From: Pelomyxa schiedti
Lineage: Eukaryota; Protista; Evosea
Assembly (NCBI GenBank): GCA_020536535.1
Contig: JAHLWZ010000939.1
Span: 1-40,637 of the forward strand
Direction of reading: 5' to 3'
Length of the DNA stretch: 40,637 bases
Part shown: positions 1 through 15,199 of the stretch, one piece after another
Layout of the letters: each line of letters begins with the position of its first letter
How positions within the stretch are numbered: the first letter of the stretch is position 1
The notes under the pieces: model-generated
What the model saw: only the letters and a program-made list of their open reading frames with translations
What the model was told of the DNA's origin: nothing
The model's database searches: none
Position numbers and translations under genes: made by a program

Positions 1-218
1 CATGGAACTCCTTGGATGTGATGCAGACCTGCCTTTTCCCTGCCACCGTGGCCGAAATCACGAATAACTTGTCTGGGTTGCAAGGAGACATTGCCACCAT
101 GCAAGGAGACATCACCACCATGCAAAGAGACATCGCCACCATTCACAAGGACTTTACCAAGCAGGAGGATCTGCTCCGACAAATACTCGAACGTTTGCCC
201 CCACCACAAACACCATGA
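1..218 (+). CDS. 3' part of a multicopy coiled-coil protein with (MQGDIAT)n heptad repeats; 5'-truncated by the window edge
   Basis: The frame is open from the window edge (WNSLDVMQTCLFPATVAEITNNLSGLQGDIATMQGDITTMQRDIAT...LPPPQTP*). A paralogous copy lies inverted at the other end of the window. Confidence 0.7.
   Translation, partial: WNSLDVMQTCLFPATVAEITNNLSGLQGDIATMQGDITTMQRDIATIHKDFTKQEDLLRQILERLPPPQTP
1..218. repeat. Left arm of an inverted repeat (partner 40321..40637)
   Basis: The first ~140 nt are nearly identical to the reverse complement of the last ~140 nt of the window. Similarity continues to the shared ccacaaacaccatga stop and then ends. Confidence 0.9.
78..140 (+). repeat. 21-nt coding tandem repeat, 3 units (atgcaaggagacatcgccacc consensus)
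   Basis: ttgcaaggagacattgccacc / atgcaaggagacatcaccacc / atgcaaagagacatcgccacc. Confidence 0.9.
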
Positions 219-305: not shown

Positions 306-3300
306 TTACACCATCTGCCTGAAGCTGCCACCCACCTCTCGGAGTGCGGCTGAGATTTGCCCCAGGGAGGCGTATCTGACGGTATCTAGCAGGACTTCAA
401 AAACGTTGGCGCCAGATGACGCGGCGGTCCTCAGGTGCGCGAGCCACGCGGGCGCCACCGTCGAATTCCTGGCTCGGAAAGCATTGGTGCGCGCGATCTG
501 CTTGTCCCAGTCGGTCTGTTCTGGCCTGACGACGTGCAGCCCAGTTCCGGCTGAGGCATCTGTGCCCCCGCCAAAGTCAGACAGCGTCGCCGAGTCCAGC
601 ACGCACACGTTTCGGCCGATTATGGGACGCTTCCCTCTGAGAGTGAGGAGGGGGAGGAATGTGAGGAAAGTGAACTGAATTTGGAATAGGAAATGAAAAG
701 GAAAAGGGATAGGGATTGGAATTCACCTGGAAATGTCATATTCGTATTGGCAGGATGCCGTGGCGATGCAATTTCTGTGGTATCCGAGCTCGGTGGCGGG
801 CCCAACTCCGCCCTCTTGGTCTATGGCCTCGAGTTCCTTGATTGATTTGTTACATTATTGACTGTTTTGATTGCGTGTGTGGTTACCTTGAGGATTTGCT
901 CCTGAAGCCCTTTTCTGATTGTACGGTGTGCATAAGAACCACTGAAAAGGTTCTCTGCTCTTAGAAGCTCAGCCTAACTGATTTAGAAAAAAATACATAA
1001 TAACTTGCATTTTCCTCCTACCTCAACAGTCAGGAAGTTGGGAATCATTGTGGCCTGTCTCACATATTTAGCAGATGGAGTTGTAAGAGGTTCATCAGCA
1101 GAATCCACATGAAGAGAATTGGTGTTATTCATTAGAGCTGAGAAGAAGTAATTAAAGACTGGGATTCCTTAAGAACTAACTTACCCATTAAGGCGTGGAA
1201 CGTCTGCCTAACAGGGTTGAGGGATTCCCATTCTGTAAAACTATATAAGACAGAAAAATAAAATAAGGAAGACCTGTACCTGGAATTTGCAGTGCTCGGC
1301 CAGATGTCTGAGTGTGGTATTTAAACGCCTGTGACCTCTCATTACCGTGATAAATGTCACGCAGAGCAACTGCCCATATTTTTCGGCAAACAGGGCCCGA
1401 GACAAGCCACTCCAGTTCATGTGAATTACGAAGGAAAAAGGAGAAATTAGGGGCAACATCATTAACCCCCATTCCCCTGCCAAGGAAATTCTCCAAATAT
1501 GTGAATCCATTGCTTAAGGAGTAGGCCAGTTCCTGCCACTTCTTAGTGGAGAGTTCAGTTGCTATTAATCGAACCTGAACAGGCGTTGCTCCAGCTTCTC
1601 CTATATGATAACCAGAAATGGAAATGCTGTAAAACTTTTGTACATGCTTTTTGATGAAAAATTCTTGTACATCTCCCATCAACTTGACGGCGAAATCTTC
1701 CTGTTGTGGTATTACTATAACACGGTTGTATGCTTAGTTGTACCTGGAAAATGCATTCATTTTGGGCTTGCATTTCTTTCAATATATCGGCTTGAATTGT
1801 GCCTCTCAGCATGCAGTATGTGCAGTCTCTTATCTCTTGGACCTATTGATTAAGTTAACTTTAGTTTCATACGAAATTCAAGTGTACCTTACTGCAGAGC
1901 AAGCCATATTCTGGGTGAATATCAGTCGCTCTGAGTGAACCTGGGCCTGGAAGTGTTGGATCTACCACAGAAACTTCTTCTGGATGTTGCTTTTTGTATT
2001 TCTCGATCATGTAATCGCATGCAGTATTGAAATACATGGCCAGTATAATAGCAGCAGGTCCATTGATTGTCATTGACTGTGTATTGATTATTACAGGAAT
2101 TGGAAGGAAATCTGATACTGTAGAAATTTTTTCGAAGTCAAACCCTGAATACAAAATCTTCATGTCATCTAGGGTACTGAGGGAATCTGAGATTCGAAAT
2201 TACTGTCTCTTGCTAACAAACCTGATGGAGACTCCTCCCTCTCCGATTTTACCAATGGACCCTGCATCCGTATCACAGTCATCTCCATACAGGGTAATTC
2301 CATCAAAAGCTGTACTGAGGCGTGGGCAAGGCACTCCCTGGCTTAGGAAATGGAATCGCTCATTTGTATGCTCTGTGATTGATGTCATAAAAACAACAAC
2401 CATTAAAATAAGGAAGCTCACCAGCAAGCCTCAATCCCGCGAACTGCCTAGTAGTTTGAAGAGCACTCTCTTGTCGTAGAGGGAATACACCATTGATATA
2501 AGGGAAGCAACCAGGAAGACCCTAGTAGATGTGGATGTAAGAAAAGGTCAAATAGCACACAAGCAAGAGGGGAACCTCTTCTAAAAGGAACTGAAGCATT
2601 CCTGCTGTATCGTCTCGATCGGGGATTGCAATCTAAGGCACATCATTTTTGATTCTTAATTGGGAGAACTACTTTTGGGATTTTCAAGCCATTGAAGCTA
2701 GTATAGTACAAAGTTTTGTTACATGTTATCTTCTCCCAGGTCTGTTCCCAGCCTGCCATTAACTAAAGGGAAAAAAGAGCTCAATACGTGTTGACACTAA
2801 GTACAGGGAAATACCTGTTGACAATAGGAATCACATGCAGCAAGGCCTGAAGTTCGACACAATTTAACCTGGTTGGCGGTGTACGTGTCATATTTCCGAA
2901 CTGCATCTACTACTAGCCCCAGATAAGAGCGTCTCGAGTGGGGAACCAGAGAGGTGAACTTGTGTATATTAAAATCTTTAAGGGATCTCTTCCAGTGCAT
3001 ACCTTGAGGGTTGAAAATGGATCCACGCCAGTGAATTTATATATTGTCTCAAAGGATAACCTCTTACACATCCAAGTGTACATATCCACAGTAGCGGGGT
3101 TGTTGGCCAGTTTGGTCACAGTGGGGAAGAGCTGAAAACTTTCATTACCGAAGGCAGTTTGTCTTGGAAAACGAACTTTTTGGTTTGGATTGCAGACTGA
3201 GGCATGAGCAAGAAGAACTTGCAACTGATCACACAAGGCCTTGGATCCCTCTCTGTCTATTTTGTTCAGAATTATGGCATCGGCTTCAAGAAGCAATTGG

Positions 3301-4799
3301 TCCTTCTCCAGCTGGAAATCGCGAGGTATGTTATTATACTGTATTCTCAAGAAAACGTTCATTACTTGAATGTGGACACTTCCAAACTCTTTGGTTTTCA
3401 CATAGAAGAGAAGGTCTGGCTTGTAAGGTGCAAAGTCCAAACCAACTTGACCTGCAAAGCATAAGTGAGAGAGAAATACTTCTCACTTTCTTACCAGTGC
3501 CTGGAGTTTCAAATATTACAAGGTCAAAATAACCAGCACGAAGAATACTCAACATCTTGGAAAGAGATGGGGGGAAGTTGCCATATACAATTCGGGTTGC
3601 CACACTCCTCATGAACACATTTGGCTTGTAAATATTGGTCATTCTTATCCTATCTCCTGCGTGAATGTAAGTTTCGATATGGGCATTATCCCAGAACTTC
3701 TATACACATACCAAGAAGGGCCGAGATATTTCCACCCCGATTGGTGGTAGGGTCAATGGAGAGAATCGCTAAGTTCCTCCTTGTACCACTGGGTTGATCT
3801 TGGCTGAACAGTCCAGCAATTTCATCTGTCAAGGTGCTCTTTCCAGCCCCTCCATCTCCTATTCACCGTTATCAACACGGCGGTACATATGAAGTAGAAT
3901 ACCAGTAACAGCGATCAATTTTCCTTGCTTATTGTAGGACTTCGCTGCGGCTAAGTACGCGGACATAAGTGACTCACATTTTAAACCTCGTGGCGTAGAA
4001 GCTCCTCCATTCGCTTCTAGCCAGCAGGATTCTTCAGCAGCATTCAACTGTGTAATATTATTCCGGCAAACGAAGTTATTACTTGCTCACAATTAGACCC
4101 AGTGCCCACTTGGCACCACTTATTGCAGCTGATACAATCTCTGTTTCACTACGAGATTCATCACAGTTTTCTACACAACGAAGAATCACATCTTTTGCTA
4201 GATTTTCCAAGGTCCTGAAGACAATTACTTACTAGCATTTAAAAGCAATAAATACCATTTTTGGCCATACACATGAGCTCCAGCCTTTTCAATCAACTCT
4301 TCATCAGCCGGAAGTATGGTTCCACCCCCACCCCCAACCTTAACAGGAAAAAAGTTGACATTGCCTTGTGGGCTACAAATAGTCACGATACACAAAACTC
4401 ACCACTACAGAGTTTCCTCCCGCTTCTTTGATGTTCCGCACTAGTGCCGGAAAGAAATGGTTATGTCCTCCATTGTAACTACTCACAGCCACACAATCGC
4501 AGCCCTCCTCAACAGCAGCTTGTACCAGTTCACAAACCTAAGAGTGAGGTTAAGTACACACAACAAAATCAAATAGATACTAAAACAAACAACAATTTCT
4601 GTCTCACCTTTCTGTTGAACCCCACATAGATCAATTCCGTCGACGCGGCGACATTCGGAGTCTCTCTGAGCGCCCGATTTACTGCGTGTATCGAGGCATC
4701 GTGGCCGTCGTAAGCCGCGCACCCTGTGATTATTCGAACGGGCCTGTGGGGGACTGGTTTTTCAACTGCAGTGGCGGCTGTATTGCTTGTTTCTGTCAT
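306..4799 (-). CDS. icmF: Fused isobutyryl-CoA mutase IcmF (cobalamin-binding domain, MeaB/MeaI-like GTPase, mutase TIM barrel); about 20 short introns
   Basis: The spliced translation gives the IcmF domain order. B12 motif: VRIITGCAAYDGHDASIH, SSYNGGH, GGGGGTI. GTPase: P-loop VTGDGGAGKST, SIDPT, LLGDRIRM, FMRSVATR, ETPGTGQ, NKID. Mutase: TTRQFAG, RLSTAFDGITLYG, RGTIQADILKEMQAQNECIF, FYSISISGYHIGEAGA, YHTQTSGRAL, C-terminal NVFEVLLDTVRYASLGQISAALREVGGSFRQMV*. Confidence 0.93.
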
Positions 4800-5267: not shown

Positions 5268-5938
5268 TTAGATATCGTCAAGTGTGTAAGTAGTTTTCTT
5301 CTCAGGGACCTTTGCAGACGCTGCAGCGGCTGCAGGAGCAGCAGCGGGCGTCGCAACTGGCCTCCCAAGAAACGAGGGATCTATTCCGAAGTGTAAGATT
5401 GAGTACGGTTAGGTTTAGTTGGAAACCTGGATCCTCCTGAAACTCGACGTGGAGTTCGTCATTGTCTCCCTCCTCGTCAACTCCCCCAGTCTCATTGATC
5501 TTAGCATTCTCTGGCAACTCACCAAAAGCCTGGTACAAGGTCAAAGAACGAATTCTTGTAAGAACATCGCACCTTTAGCATCCTAGCCTCCTCCGAGTTA
5601 TACTTGAGAATAACATCGGCCTTGCCATCCTGATAGTCCCTGAGGCCCAAAAGCACAATGTCTCCTTGATTCACCCAGACCTTCTTACGCAATTTGCCGC
5701 GAATATGGCACATTCTCTTAGACCCATCAAAGCAAGCAGCTTCGAGACGACCATTCCCTAGCATCCTAGTAACTTGCGCGTACTCTAACGTTACCCACGT
5801 TAAAAAAAAAAAATGCGGTAAATTTAAAAAAACAGATAAACCTTGGCCATCCTCCTTAAACGTAAGTTCGCGTTTCACATCGCCTTCATTCTTTCCCCTC
5901 CTACGGTTCTTTCCTCCTTTTCCTTTGTTCTTCGGCAT
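5268..5938 (-). CDS. eIF1A: Eukaryotic translation initiation factor 1A (3 introns)
   Basis: [18 protein letters not shown]...FKEDGQ|[21 protein letters not shown]...[11 protein letters not shown]...[15 protein letters not shown]. The spliced C-terminus ends ...TTYTLDDI*. Confidence 0.97.
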
Positions 5939-12400: not shown

Positions 12401-14965
12401 AACGCACGAATACTTTGATTTCTTTTTTTGGAGGTAAACTTTTTTCCACATCAACCTTTGTTCGGCGAAGCATGAAAGGCTTGAGGATCTTTTTATTGTT
12501 TAGTCTACGCATATCTTTTTAGAGAGCCTACTGTATGCAGCCGTTGTACAGTATCTGCTTGATGCTCAGCATCCATTTGAAACCACTCATCAAAATCTTC
12601 AGCGGAATCAAAGACTTCAGGTAAAAGAAAGTTGAGTAAAGCCCACAGTTCATGTAAATTGTTCTGAAGAGGTTAATGAGATTGCTTTGAAAGAAAGATA
12701 TGCCCACTTGCAATGGAGTCCCTGTTAGTAGTAGTCTGTGATCATTATCGAATTTTCTTACAAGTTGGGAAAGGAGAGAGTGCTCGTTCTTGATTCGATG
12801 AGCTTATGGACCTTAGTGATTATGGAGAGGAAAAACACCTCGTACCTTCATCAATAACAAGGTAACTAGTAAGGAGTAAATCAATAACCTGGGAAAAAGG
12901 GGGAAAACCTCCATTTTATTTTACGTAGAGGCAACTGCTCAATCTTGGCAATTTCATATGATGTTAAGACAACATTGAATTTCCGTTTTCTTATTTGTGC
13001 AACAATCTCTGGCTGAAAGAAATGGAGATAAACAGTAAGGAGAACGTGGCGAAGACTTTAAGAATACCCTATCCTCTTTCGATCCAATGAGTTTGATGAC
13101 ATTTAGATATGGGGCCCATCGGTGAAGCTCTGTTTCCCATCCATGCAGTGTTGATTTAGGAGCGACAACTATGTGAGGCCCTTTATTGTGGCGTAATTTG
13201 TAAAGGTATCCTTGAGGTAGATTAGAATACACATTAGAGAGCAACAACCAAACCAAAGAGGGCAATTGTTTCAAGAGTTTTTCCAAGCCCCTAGATATAA
13301 GAAATTACACTCATGTTTCTTAAAAGGGGAAAACCATTTCATCAGCTAGAATACTGTTGATGCCTCCATCGTGCCTCCTTATCAACCAGTTAAGCGCATC
13401 AACTTGGTAAGTCTTCATTGAACCATTCTTAATAACTTGATTTCTTTAGACAGTGTAACAGAGTGAACAAACGTACAGGGAGGGGACTCATCGAAATGAG
13501 TTTGGGACATATCAACTTCATCGAGGGCTGTTTGAACTAATTCATCATCTTCATCTTTTTCCGCTCTACTGAGACGTTTACTGGGTGTATGTGGAATCTG
13601 AGCATCAAGACTGCTCCTTGTTCTAATGCATCGCGTATATAGTTCAGTCTGCTCCATCATGAATTTCAAGCGCTTTTCACGCTTTTTTTGCTGGTTTTTG
13701 TTTTGTTTTTATTTTGGCTTACACAAAAGATTCCAAGGTTTACTTGCTTTTCGAGAAATGGCATCGAGTTCAGATTGTGAAGCTGCAGCTGATCCACTTT
13801 CAGGTTTATCTGCACTTTCAGGTTTGTCTGGTGTACTTGTGCCATCTGTTTCCTTTTGTTCGTTGGTTGGTTTTTTGTCCATTTTTGTGTCATCTTTGTC
13901 CGTGGCATCGGTTGTGTCAACGTCTTTGTCGGTTGTGTCTTTGGCATTGTTTTCATTATTGCTAGTGTCTTTTGGTTCCTCATCCTTGTCAGAAGTGTTT
14001 TTTCCAGCCTCCTCTTCAATGTCTCCAACAAATTTTTCCCATTCTTCTTCTTGGGTTTCCTTGAGTTCACGCAGTTGGCTTAACCTCCTCTCTCGCAGAG
14101 CCCTAAAAGCTTTTTCTGCCTTGTTTGGAACGACATCTTCCTCAGTGCTGGATCCACTCCCTTCACTACTGTCACTCTCACTTCCACTCGACCTGTTCGA
14201 TCTGCCCTTGGCAGCACCACCTCTTCCCCTTCCCCTTCCACGTGCAGCTGGGGCAGGCTTTTTCCGCTGCCCCCAGTCTGAGTCCGCGTCGCTGCTGCTG
14301 CTCTCGCTGTCACTATCATTTCTCCTCGAGGGGGGGTTCCTCCTGCCCCCGCCGCCGCCCCCTCTCCCGCGGCCCCCCCTTGCTCCCCTGCCCCTCGCCC
14401 CCCCTCTGCCCCTTCCTCTGGACCCAGAGCCCTTGCCCTCCCTCCAGTCACCGTCCTTTTTAGTACTAGAGTCACTCCCGCTCCCGCTGCCGCTTCCACT
14501 GCCACTTCCGCTCCCGCTCCCGCTCCCACTCCCACTCCCACTCTCGCTGCCGCTTCCACTGCCACTTCTGCTCCTGCTCCCACTTGCACTCCTGCTTCTG
14601 CTTTTGCTTCTGCTTTTGCTTTTGCTTCTGCTCCTGCTTCGACTCCTGCTTGTGCTCCCCTTCTTGTCTGTCATCTCGTGGTCGCTGTGGTCACCTTTCT
14701 TCGACGTGGAAGTAGTAGTAGTGGCAGTTGTACTCGTGGTCTTCGCGTCCGACTCCTCAATCGACGTATCACCCTCGTCGTCCTCGCCCTTCTTATCTAC
14801 AAACAGGGGGGAAAAAAAAAAAAAAAAACCAAAAGCGCAGTCGGTCAGCCCCAAACATAACAAACCATTCTCTGTCCCACAATGCACATACACACCGGTC
14901 GTAGTGGACACGTCGTCGTCCCGCGAGTCGTCGATGGTGGTATCGCCTCCGGTGCTGGAATCCAT
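9481..14965 (-). CDS. ISWI: ISWI-family SNF2 chromatin-remodelling ATPase with HAND-SANT-SLIDE region and long low-complexity tails
   Basis: ILADEM|[11 protein letters not shown]|[25 protein letters not shown]|[67 protein letters not shown]|[21 protein letters not shown]-like [14 protein letters not shown]...[15 protein letters not shown], Lys-rich C-terminus. Confidence 0.93.
14474..14652 (-). repeat. Coding hexanucleotide-type repeats encoding (SR/SK)n and (SG)n runs in the ISWI N-terminus
   Basis: Runs of ctcccg/cttcca/ctgccg/cttctg/cttttg on the + strand; protein [15 protein letters not shown]...[10 protein letters not shown]. Confidence 0.8.
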
Positions 14966-15199
14966 TGCCTCTTTAGTGGGGGGTGCAGCACCAAAGAACA
15001 AAGTTTGAAAAAAAAAAAAAGAAAAAAGGAAAAATAGAACCTTCTTTCTGGTTTATTTTTGGTGTTTGTAGGGTTTAAATACTAAGATGCGATGGCATAG
15101 GATTCCATCGAATTCGGAAATCCCAACATATTATTACTAAGAGATTGTTAAGTGTTGTGCCGTGGTAAGGTACCTTTTGTTGTATTGTTGTTTGTCGAA

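What the first reader, a model, noticed from the sequence alone, without database searches (positions are those of the whole stretch)
306..4799. Intron-containing eukaryotic IcmF: a B12-dependent isobutyryl-CoA mutase fused to its G-protein chaperone
Seen: B12-binding domain (DGHDAS), MeaB-like GTPase (GDGGAGKST, NKID) and mutase barrel in one gene with about 20 spliceosomal introns, adjacent to eIF1A, so it is not bacterial contamination. Established: this domain order defines IcmF, which is characterised in bacteria. The familiar eukaryotic system is instead methylmalonyl-CoA mutase (MMUT) with the B12 domain C-terminal and a separate chaperone (MMAA). Inference: an old lateral acquisition giving this protist a second class of adenosylcobalamin chemistry. 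I know of no characterised eukaryotic IcmF.
Basis: partly seen in the sequence, partly recalled or inferred. Interest (0 to 1): 0.9.

Follow-up and report, generated by a model that had tools for sequence, protein, structure and literature searches.

The report
Amoeba gene for fused B12 mutase
The anaerobic amoeba Pelomyxa schiedti carries a real nuclear gene with 24 introns for an IcmF-like enzyme, a vitamin-B12 acyl-CoA mutase fused to its own GTPase helper. The gene was most likely taken from prokaryotes, sits in GenBank under the wrong name, and is the only such mutase I could find in this genome.

Summary
Window 306-4799 (minus strand) holds one gene of 25 exons and 24 GT-AG introns of 40-90 nt. 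It encodes 1098 aa in the order B12-binding domain, MeaB-like GTPase, mutase barrel. It equals the GenBank protein 'methylmalonyl-CoA mutase [Pelomyxa schiedti]', a name that does not fit.

- **Real eukaryotic gene.** All 24 junctions align without gaps to intronless prokaryotic homologues. The neighbours are eukaryotic (eIF-1A, SH2, BRAP2).
- **IcmF-like, not MMUT.** The best solved structure is Cupriavidus IcmF. The residues that set substrate choice are the IcmF pair (Phe570, Gln736), not the MCM Tyr/Arg pair. All GTPase motifs are intact.
- **Not a canonical IcmF.** It falls in an uncharacterised sister clade and scores 843 bits against NCBI's IcmF cut-off of 1500.
- **Origin.** Its nearest prokaryotic relatives are uncultured archaea that look like Thermoplasmatota.
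- **Not a second AdoCbl system.** I found no MMUT or MMAA in the assembly.
- **Not unique.** At least one other unidentified eukaryote has an intron-bearing relative.

I found no paper describing a eukaryotic IcmF. RNA reads could not be checked. I file it as a new member of a known kind, of moderate interest. One idea is still untested. The enzyme may connect valine breakdown to butyrate, which the amoeba's Syntrophus symbiont consumes.

The parts
306..4799 (-). Whole coding region of the IcmF-like gene: 25 exons, 24 introns, 1098 aa plus stop. Exons (high to low): 4799-4608, 4537-4403, 4338-4256, 4214-4091, 4047-3903, 3858-3712, 3656-3495, 3451-3366, 3311-3177, 3131-3003, 2958-2815, 2762-2673, 2632-2576, 2521-2422, 2372-2222, 2176-2119, 2076-1888, 1842-1744, 1700-1575, 1532-1280, 1232-1185, 1137-1022, 973-887, 836-727, 636-306.
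   Evidence: The deposited protein P0166 maps exactly onto the window. Every intron is GT..AG and 40-90 nt. Every junction is gap-free against intronless homologues.
4297..4736 (-). B12-binding (Rossmann-like) domain, aa 22-123. It includes DGHDAS, with the predicted cobalt-ligand His33 at 4703-4701.
   Evidence: Pfam PF02310 E 1.6e-11 on P0166. Exon 1 aligns to residues 22-90 of the 4xc6 chain. D31, G32, H33 and D34 are invariant in A1.
3210..3951 (-). MeaB-like G-protein chaperone domain, aa 211-392. It carries the P-loop GDGGAGKST (aa 227-235), switch III Q358/K361, and NKID (aa 374-377, window 3266-3255).
   Evidence: Pfam PF03308 E 5.3e-22. The best PDB match is IcmF chain residues 280-340. 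The invariant columns are listed in A1. The role of switch III residues Q341/K344 in IcmF comes from PMC10481361.
327..2587 (-). Acyl-CoA mutase substrate barrel, aa 540-1092. The specificity residues are Phe570 (2443-2441) and Gln736 (1764-1762).
   Evidence: Pfam PF01642 E 7.5e-92. The segment scores E 8.8e-68 against IcmF 4xc6, versus 1e-35 for HCM and 2.6e-31 for human MMUT. F570 aligns with chain index 618 (native Phe598) and Q736 with index 762 (native Gln742).
1533..1574 (-). Intron 19, an in-frame 42-nt intron without a stop codon. Read through, it looks like a 14-aa insertion.
   Evidence: It appears as a gap of 14 residues against IcmF and against every close homologue. Its ends are GT..AG.
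5519..5938 (-). Neighbouring eIF-1A gene (exon ORF). This is context showing a eukaryotic nuclear contig.
   Evidence: Pfam PF01176 E 3e-23.

Best explanation
This is a functional nuclear gene of the archamoeba Pelomyxa schiedti. It encodes a cytosolic IcmF-type enzyme, in which an adenosylcobalamin-dependent acyl-CoA mutase and its MeaB-like G-protein chaperone form one polypeptide.

**Shown.** The gene structure, the domain order, the intact catalytic and GTPase motifs, the IcmF-type Phe/Gln specificity pair, and the position in the tree.

**Inferred from characterised bacterial IcmF.** A PduO-type adenosyltransferase, which the genome encodes, hands AdoCbl to the N-terminal B12 domain. The GTPase domain uses GTP to gate loading and to eject damaged cofactor. 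The barrel then interconverts isobutyryl-CoA and n-butyryl-CoA by a radical 1,2-shift. It may also act on isovaleryl-CoA and pivalyl-CoA.

**Origin.** The gene most probably reached an ancestor of Pelomyxa by lateral transfer from a prokaryote. The nearest known prokaryotic relatives are uncultured archaea resembling Thermoplasmatota. The gene has since gained 24 host-type introns.

**Likely role (inferred).** It would feed valine-derived or imported isobutyryl units into straight-chain butyryl-CoA, for beta-oxidation or for release as butyrate.
For: **Gene model.** There are 24 GT-AG introns, and the exons reproduce GenBank protein P0166 exactly. All junctions are gap-free against intronless homologues.

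**Nuclear context.** The neighbours are eIF-1A, SH2 and BRAP2. The assembly size and scaffold number match the published P. schiedti genome.

**Family.**
- Pfam gives B12-binding, MeaB and MM_CoA_mutase in that order.
- The best PDB hit for each of the three domains is Cupriavidus IcmF.
- The top NCBIfam hit is IcmF at 843 bits, against 294 bits for MCM.

**Residues.** Phe570 matches Phe598 and Gln736 matches Gln742. His33, the P-loop, switches I-III and NKxD are invariant in A1.

**Phylogeny.** Pelomyxa + P0151 + P0002 are sister to P0160-65, with support 97/97 under LG+G4 and 96 under LG+C20. P0160-65 are archaeal because a contig carrying one of them has an archaeal TBP gene, whose best named hits are Thermoplasmata. 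All of these sit inside a fully supported clade with Geobacterales proteins, separate from canonical IcmF.

**Cofactor supply and pathway genes in the genome.** I found a PduO-type adenosyltransferase in two exon pieces, MetH, BCAT-family genes, an acyl-CoA dehydrogenase and many ADP-forming acyl-CoA synthetases. The gene is single-copy.
Against: - No member of this sister clade has been assayed, and the protein fails the curated IcmF equivalog cut-off. The substrate is therefore inferred from two residues and from general similarity (36-38% identity to canonical IcmF).
Expression and splicing rest on homology and on the deposited model.
- The direction and date of the transfer are not proven. 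The donor lineage is known only from metagenome contigs.
- The cytosolic location rests only on the lack of an N-terminal extension or a C-terminal PTS1-like tail.
- I did not search for a corrinoid uptake route.
Confidence: 0.72

Rival explanations
1. The architecture is the same, but the chemistry differs. The sister clade (Pelomyxa, archaeal and Geobacterales proteins) would be a fused AdoCbl mutase whose real substrate is another acyl-CoA, such as isovaleryl/pivalyl-CoA or an unknown one.
For: - The clade is separated from characterised IcmFs by a long, fully supported branch.
- All tested members score 840-925 bits against a cut-off of 1500.
- Several motifs conserved across these mutases differ between the clades, for example HVDSADE against HTNAYDE, and RQFAGLR against RMFAGEG. 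I did not establish whether they line the active site.
Against: - The two positions known to separate ICM from MCM, HCM and related mutases are the ICM pair Phe/Gln.
- The HCM-type Asp in the STxFD motif is absent, since the motif reads STAFD.
- IcmF itself already accepts isovaleryl/pivalyl-CoA (my own knowledge, Banerjee laboratory).
Confidence: 0.2
2. It is an ordinary methylmalonyl-CoA mutase, as the GenBank record says.
For: The GenBank and nr name is 'methylmalonyl-CoA mutase'. The Pfam barrel family is named after MCM.
Against: - The B12 domain is N-terminal and a GTPase is fused in the middle.
- Phe and Gln stand where MCM has the carboxylate-binding Tyr and Arg.
- The NCBIfam MCM model gives 294 bits against a cut-off of 876.
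- For the barrel segment, human MMUT scores E 2.6e-31 and IcmF scores 8.8e-68.
Confidence: 0.02
3. It is prokaryotic DNA in a single-cell assembly, from a symbiont, prey or a contaminant.
For: P. schiedti carries bacterial and archaeal endosymbionts (PMC10579272). The closest relatives of the protein are prokaryotic.
Against: - There are 24 spliceosomal introns, and 15 of them shift the reading frame.
- The same 40.6 kb contig carries eIF-1A, SH2 and BRAP2 genes.
- GC content is 42-52%, like the rest of the contig.
- The protein is only 53-58% identical to its closest prokaryotic relatives.
Confidence: 0.01
4. It is a decaying or silent relic of an old transfer with no present function.
For: Neither P. 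schiedti paper mentions the enzyme.
Against: - The frame is open across all 25 exons.
- About 200 columns, including every catalytic and GTPase motif, are invariant with active homologues.
- A 72-73% identical relative (P0151) points to purifying selection.
- The matching adenosyltransferase has been kept in the genome.
Confidence: 0.05

Closest known systems
IcmF, the fused isobutyryl-CoA mutase of Cupriavidus metallidurans (PDB 4XC6, 8SSL) and Geobacillus kaustophilus
   Same: - The three-domain order in one chain is the same.
- The DGHDAS cobalamin motif, the P-loop, switches I-III and NKxD are all present.
- The Phe/Gln specificity pair is the same.
- It is the best solved-structure match for every domain.
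   Different: - Overall identity is only 36-38%.
- The Pelomyxa protein lies in a separate, fully supported clade.
- It scores below the NCBIfam equivalog cut-off.
- It is encoded by a eukaryotic nuclear gene with 24 introns.
Uncharacterised sister-clade fused mutases: archaeal metagenome proteins P0160-P0165, the P0003/P0156-P0159 group (one cluster named Thermoplasmata archaeon), and Geobacterales 'fused isobutyryl-CoA mutase' or 'methylmalonyl-CoA mutase family protein'
   Same: - Identity is 47-58% over the full length.
- The insertions and clade-specific motifs are shared.
- The NCBIfam scores are similar and also below the cut-off.
   Different: These genes are intronless and sit in compact prokaryotic neighbourhoods, in one case next to a CobA-type adenosyltransferase. 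None has been characterised biochemically, as far as I could find.
Human and other eukaryotic MMUT with the separate chaperone MMAA and adenosyltransferase MMAB
   Same: The radical AdoCbl mutase superfamily is the same, and so is the logic of G-protein-gated cofactor loading. A PduO/MMAB-type adenosyltransferase is present in the Pelomyxa genome.
   Different: - In MMUT the barrel is N-terminal and the B12 domain C-terminal, and the chaperone is a separate protein.
- MMUT has Tyr/Arg where this protein has Phe/Gln.
- MMUT is mitochondrial.
- I found no MMUT or MMAA in this genome.
Two-subunit isobutyryl-CoA mutase IcmA/IcmB with the chaperone MeaI (Streptomyces)
   Same: The predicted reaction and the Phe/Gln pair are the same (my own knowledge of the family).
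   Different: There the barrel, the B12 domain and the chaperone are three separate polypeptides. Here they are fused.

Membership tests
IcmF (fused isobutyryl-CoA mutase/GTPase) | One polypeptide in the order B12-binding domain, MeaB-like GTPase, mutase barrel | tested here: met
   Pfam on P0166 gives PF02310 at aa 22-123, PF03308 at 211-392 and PF01642 at 540-1092. The exon-wise scans are collinear with this.
IcmF (fused isobutyryl-CoA mutase/GTPase) | Cobalamin-binding motif with the histidine ligand (DGHDAS, as in Cupriavidus IcmF) | tested here: met
   D31, G32, H33 and D34 are invariant in A1. The motif aligns with DGHDAS of 4xc6.
IcmF (fused isobutyryl-CoA mutase/GTPase) | Complete G-protein motifs: P-loop, switch I, switch II, switch III (Gln and Lys) and NKxD | tested here: met
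   GDGGAGKST, D262, D277/R280, E325, Q358/K361 and N374-K375-x-D377 are all invariant in A1. The role of switch III Q341/K344 is taken from PMC10481361.
IcmF (fused isobutyryl-CoA mutase/GTPase) | Phe and Gln at the two substrate-specifying positions (Phe598 and Gln742 of Cupriavidus IcmF) | tested here: met
   F570 and Q736 align to chain indices 618 and 762 of 4xc6, which is native numbering plus 20. That these two positions set specificity is my own knowledge (Jost et al. 2015); the paper was not held.
IcmF (fused isobutyryl-CoA mutase/GTPase) | Score above the curated NCBIfam equivalog cut-off (NF045497, 1500 bits) | tested here: not met
   P0166 scores 843.5 bits. The sister-clade proteins P0160, P0004 and P0312 score 923, 858 and 900. 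The canonical P0030 scores 1679.
IcmF (fused isobutyryl-CoA mutase/GTPase) | Placement inside the clade that holds the characterised enzymes (Cupriavidus, Geobacillus-like, Nocardia) | tested here: not met
   It falls in the sister clade, and the split has 100% support in three trees.
IcmF (fused isobutyryl-CoA mutase/GTPase) | AdoCbl-dependent isobutyryl-CoA/n-butyryl-CoA mutase activity and GTPase activity | not testable with these tools
   This needs recombinant enzyme assays.
Methylmalonyl-CoA mutase (MMUT/MCM) | Barrel N-terminal and B12 domain C-terminal, with no fused GTPase | tested here: not met
   The order is reversed and a GTPase is inserted between the two domains.
Methylmalonyl-CoA mutase (MMUT/MCM) | Tyr and Arg that bind the substrate carboxylate | tested here: not met
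   Phe570 and Gln736 occupy those positions.
Methylmalonyl-CoA mutase (MMUT/MCM) | Score above the NCBIfam equivalog cut-off (NF006944, 876 bits) | tested here: not met
   The score is 293.6 bits.

The most novel reading that the evidence does not exclude
The host-encoded IcmF-like enzyme could be a missing link in the Pelomyxa consortium. The amoeba would turn valine-derived or imported isobutyryl-CoA into n-butyryl-CoA and butyrate. Butyrate is one of the two acids its Syntrophus endosymbiont is predicted to live on, and the published model leaves the source of that acid unexplained (PMC10579272). The B12 cofactor might in turn come from the prokaryotic partners, which would make the dependence two-way, but I did not check cobamide synthesis in the symbionts. 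A second part of this reading is that the gene came from an archaeon and occurs in several anaerobic eukaryote lineages.
Probability: 0.15. Interest if true: 0.75.

Novelty: new member of a known kind. Interest (0 to 1): 0.5.

Why it matters
**What is new.** AdoCbl-dependent carbon-skeleton mutases in eukaryotes are known essentially as mitochondrial MMUT with separate MMAA and MMAB. Here a eukaryote appears to lack MMUT and instead has an IcmF-type fused enzyme, so the list of B12-dependent reactions in eukaryotes grows by one.

**Annotation and evolution.** The public annotation ('methylmalonyl-CoA mutase') should be corrected. The gene also adds a well-supported case of a prokaryotic, apparently archaeal, gene becoming a fully intron-bearing nuclear gene in an anaerobic protist.

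**An uncharacterised clade.** The work points to a large sister clade of IcmF in Geobacterales and in archaea resembling Thermoplasmatota, for which I found no report of a substrate assay.

**A testable idea.** The amoeba's amino-acid breakdown may be linked to the butyrate-oxidising symbiont, and this can be tested.

**Limits on the surprise.** Lateral gain of metabolic genes is common in Archamoebae, and the chemistry is predicted rather than shown.

Tried and rejected
- **Named close relatives.** They were useful as named outgroups but not for naming the close clade.
- **First trees.** The 64-row tree under the mixture model did not finish in two runs. I replaced it with LG+G4 and a smaller mixture-model tree.
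- **Key papers not held.** The two main IcmF papers (PMC4646380, PMC2804213) were unavailable.
- **Retained intron test.** Comparing L014 with L015 for a retained intron showed only a 2-nt indel. Whether P0001/P0151 come from a eukaryote is therefore unproven.
- **MMACHC.** The Pfam search was uninformative because the control genomes did not respond either.
- **ESM Atlas.** The look-up added nothing beyond 'fused isobutyryl-CoA mutase' clusters.
- **Gene neighbourhoods.** The prokaryotic relatives' neighbourhoods gave no clear acyl-CoA pathway context apart from one adjacent CobA-type adenosyltransferase.
- **Rejected readings.** I rejected contamination, canonical MCM and two separate genes. 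The evidence is given under the rival explanations.
- **Structure prediction.** I skipped it because sequence similarity to solved IcmF is already decisive for the fold.
Full report
**What is in the sequence**

On the minus strand, from the ATG at 4799 to the TAA at 308-306, three-frame translation gives a chain of short open segments. Scanned one by one, these hit Pfam in this order:
- B12-binding at 4376-4537;
- MeaB at 3337-3862;
- MM_CoA_mutase, with profile positions rising from 55 to 512 between 2430 and 309.

Each domain's best match among solved structures is the fused isobutyryl-CoA mutase IcmF of Cupriavidus metallidurans (4xc6, 8ssl), and the matches fall in the same order along the chain:
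- exon 1 aligns to chain residues 22-90;
- the GTPase exon aligns to 280-340;
- a barrel exon aligns to 769-892 with E 1.1e-38, against 2e-11 for human MMUT.

**Gene model**

A search seeded with a close full-length relative returned P0166, the GenBank/nr protein 'methylmalonyl-CoA mutase [Pelomyxa schiedti]'. It has 1098 aa and sits on a 40,637-bp contig, which is this window.

P0166 maps exactly onto 25 blocks of the window. All 24 introns start with GT and end with AG and are 40-90 nt long. The exons sum to 3297 nt. Fifteen intron lengths are not multiples of three, so no prokaryotic reading of the locus is possible. Intron 19 (1574-1533, 42 nt) is in frame and has no stop. That explains the 14-residue 'insertion' seen when the exon is read through.

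In an alignment with intronless relatives, all 24 junctions are free of gaps. This supports the model independently of RNA.

I did not build or submit a joined coding sequence of my own. Searches with the full-length protein used the database record P0166, and window sequence was searched exon by exon by reference. The junction check translated only adjacent block pairs inside a script and printed coordinates only.

**Organism and context**

Earlier notes of this scan name the genome as Pelomyxa schiedti. Two things confirm this:
- the NCBI name of P0166;
- the assembly figures, 52,367,397 bases in 5337 contigs, against 52.4 Mb and 5337 scaffolds in the genome paper (PMC8887013).

That paper also reports 7.43 introns per gene and about 82% BUSCO completeness.

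The contig carries eIF-1A directly upstream of the mutase gene, plus SH2- and BRAP2-domain ORFs. GC content is similar across the contig. This is nuclear DNA, not symbiont or prey DNA.

**Which mutase it is**

On the whole protein, Pfam gives B12-binding at aa 22-123, MeaB at 211-392 and the mutase barrel at 540-1092.

Phe570 and Gln736 align with chain indices 618 and 762 of 4xc6. The chain carries a 20-residue tag, so these are native Phe598 and Gln742. From my own knowledge of the family (Jost et al. 2015, a paper not held here), these two positions separate isobutyryl-CoA mutases from MCM, which has Tyr and Arg there. The Asp typical of HCM in the STxFD motif is also absent.

The following are invariant across the alignment:
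- the histidine ligand motif;
- the P-loop;
- switch I and switch II;
- the NKxD motif;
- switch III Gln358 and Lys361.

The switch III residues correspond to Q341 and K344 of IcmF, where the K344A substitution abolished detectable GTPase activity and Q341A lowered catalytic efficiency 2.6-fold (PMC10481361).

The GenBank name 'methylmalonyl-CoA mutase' therefore does not fit. NCBI's MCM model gives 294 bits against a cut-off of 876, while the IcmF model gives 843 bits.

**Not a canonical IcmF**

The score of 843 bits is well below the curated IcmF equivalog cut-off of 1500. A canonical IcmF (P0030) scores 1679. The close relatives P0160, P0004 and P0312 score 923, 858 and 900.

Three trees gave the same picture: a 64-row LG+G4 quick tree, a 33-row careful tree and a 20-row LG+C20 tree. 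All split the fused mutases into two fully supported clades.
- One clade holds Cupriavidus, Bacillota, Actinomycetota and other named IcmFs.
- The other holds Geobacterales proteins, several unnamed metagenome groups and the Pelomyxa protein. NCBI names the Geobacterales proteins either 'methylmalonyl-CoA mutase family protein' or 'Fused isobutyryl-CoA mutase'.

Identity to canonical IcmF is 36-38%, and to the closest relatives 53-58%. I found no report that any member of the second clade has been assayed. The predicted substrate is therefore an inference.

**Origin**

Pelomyxa groups with P0001/P0151 (JGI contigs, 72-73% identity over the shared part) and with P0002 (a Logan contig). That group is sister to P0160-P0165, with support 97/97 in the careful tree and 96 under the mixture model.

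P0160-P0165 lie on compact, intronless contigs. One of these contigs carries a TBP gene, which makes it archaeal. The best named relatives of that TBP are Thermoplasmata and Methanomassiliicoccales at 53-59% identity. A neighbouring group, P0159, has cluster members that NCBI names 'Thermoplasmata archaeon'.

The simplest reading is transfer from an anaerobic prokaryote, most likely an archaeon resembling Thermoplasmatota, into a Pelomyxa ancestor. The 24 host-type introns and host-like base composition argue that the transfer is not recent. I cannot show the direction of transfer formally. Whether P0001, P0151 and P0002 come from eukaryotes is also unproven.

**Not unique among eukaryotes**

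A second group, P0168 with P0190/P0312, is very probably eukaryotic.
- In NCBI assembly GCA_041447055.1 the gene is broken into a 54-aa ORF and a 1019-aa ORF, 233 nt apart.
- One transcript-like contig encodes an uninterrupted 1085-aa protein.
- Another encodes 1100 aa and keeps a 45-nt in-frame segment that the genomic ORF also contains.
- P0168 has an N-terminal extension rich in Arg, Leu and Ser that looks like an organelle-targeting peptide.

This group does not join Pelomyxa in the trees. An AU test does not quite reject putting all the putative eukaryotic rows in one clade (p = 0.051). One transfer or two both remain possible.

**Rest of the pathway in the genome**

No second mutase or MeaB locus was found with the Pfam models, with the NCBIfam MCM model at E up to 1, or with P0166 itself as the query. 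MMUT and MMAA appear to be absent. Two cautions apply: the exons are short, and the assembly is about 82% complete.

Genes that are present:
- a PduO/MMAB-type adenosyltransferase in two exon pieces at C850;
- MetH at C73;
- class IV (BCAT-family) aminotransferase genes, the Pfam family that includes branched-chain aminotransferases;
- one acyl-CoA dehydrogenase locus;
- at least seven loci for ADP-forming acyl-CoA synthetases.

The published metabolic model lists a complete beta-oxidation pathway in the amoeba. It also notes that the Syntrophus endosymbiont should live on butyrate and isovalerate, and that no source within the consortium is predicted for them (PMC10579272). Syntrophic breakdown of isobutyrate is known to need isomerisation by an isobutyryl-CoA mutase (PMC5017805).

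This suggests a testable role for the amoeba enzyme, namely routing valine-derived isobutyryl-CoA to butyryl-CoA or butyrate. It is a hypothesis only.

**Literature**

Full-text searches found no paper describing an IcmF in a eukaryote. The two P. schiedti papers and the supplement files that were held do not mention a mutase. The Mastigamoeba genome paper does not mention one either.

**Verdict**

- the protein belongs to a sister clade, not to canonical IcmF;
- it is the only AdoCbl mutase found in the genome, not a second one;
- it is not unique among eukaryotes;
- it is already deposited under a misleading name.

I rate it a new member of a known kind, of moderate interest.

Noticed in passing
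G000:C996:21536-22735 (L005:1123-2322, minus strand): An uninterrupted 399-aa ORF with B12-binding_2 and B12-binding domains, so it looks like a corrinoid protein or a MetH fragment. It is separate from the MetH locus on C73 and has no introns in a very intron-rich genome. I did not examine its origin.
   Followed up: partly
G000:C971:32287-33327 (L008:781-1821, minus strand): A 346-aa ORF combining a B12-binding domain with a radical SAM domain. It is another candidate cobalamin-dependent enzyme in the assembly.
   Followed up: partly
NCBI assembly GCA_041447055.1, 10,305-bp contig (no DNA could be fetched); proteins P0190, P0311, P0312, P0315: An unidentified eukaryote has an IcmF-like gene with at least two small introns. 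One transcript form keeps a 45-nt in-frame intron. A sister sequence, P0168 from SRR24608319, has an N-terminus that looks like an organelle-targeting peptide.
   Followed up: partly
window 12-218 (+): The end of the contig has an ORF with a repeated motif of the type LQGDIATMQGDITTMQRDIATIH, which looks like a coiled coil. It is probably the tail of a gene cut off by the contig end.
   Followed up: no
window 13626-15008: This stretch has long ORFs on both strands (460 aa on plus, 430 aa on minus). GC content is 0.57 with strongly negative GC and AT skew, and there is no Pfam hit. It is probably low-complexity or repeat-rich coding sequence.
   Followed up: no
L010:5456-6082 and the matching positions in L011 and L012: In a bacterial sister-clade relative (P0152), a CobA/CobO/BtuR-type adenosyltransferase gene lies directly downstream of the fused mutase. 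This fits an AdoCbl-dependent enzyme.
   Followed up: no
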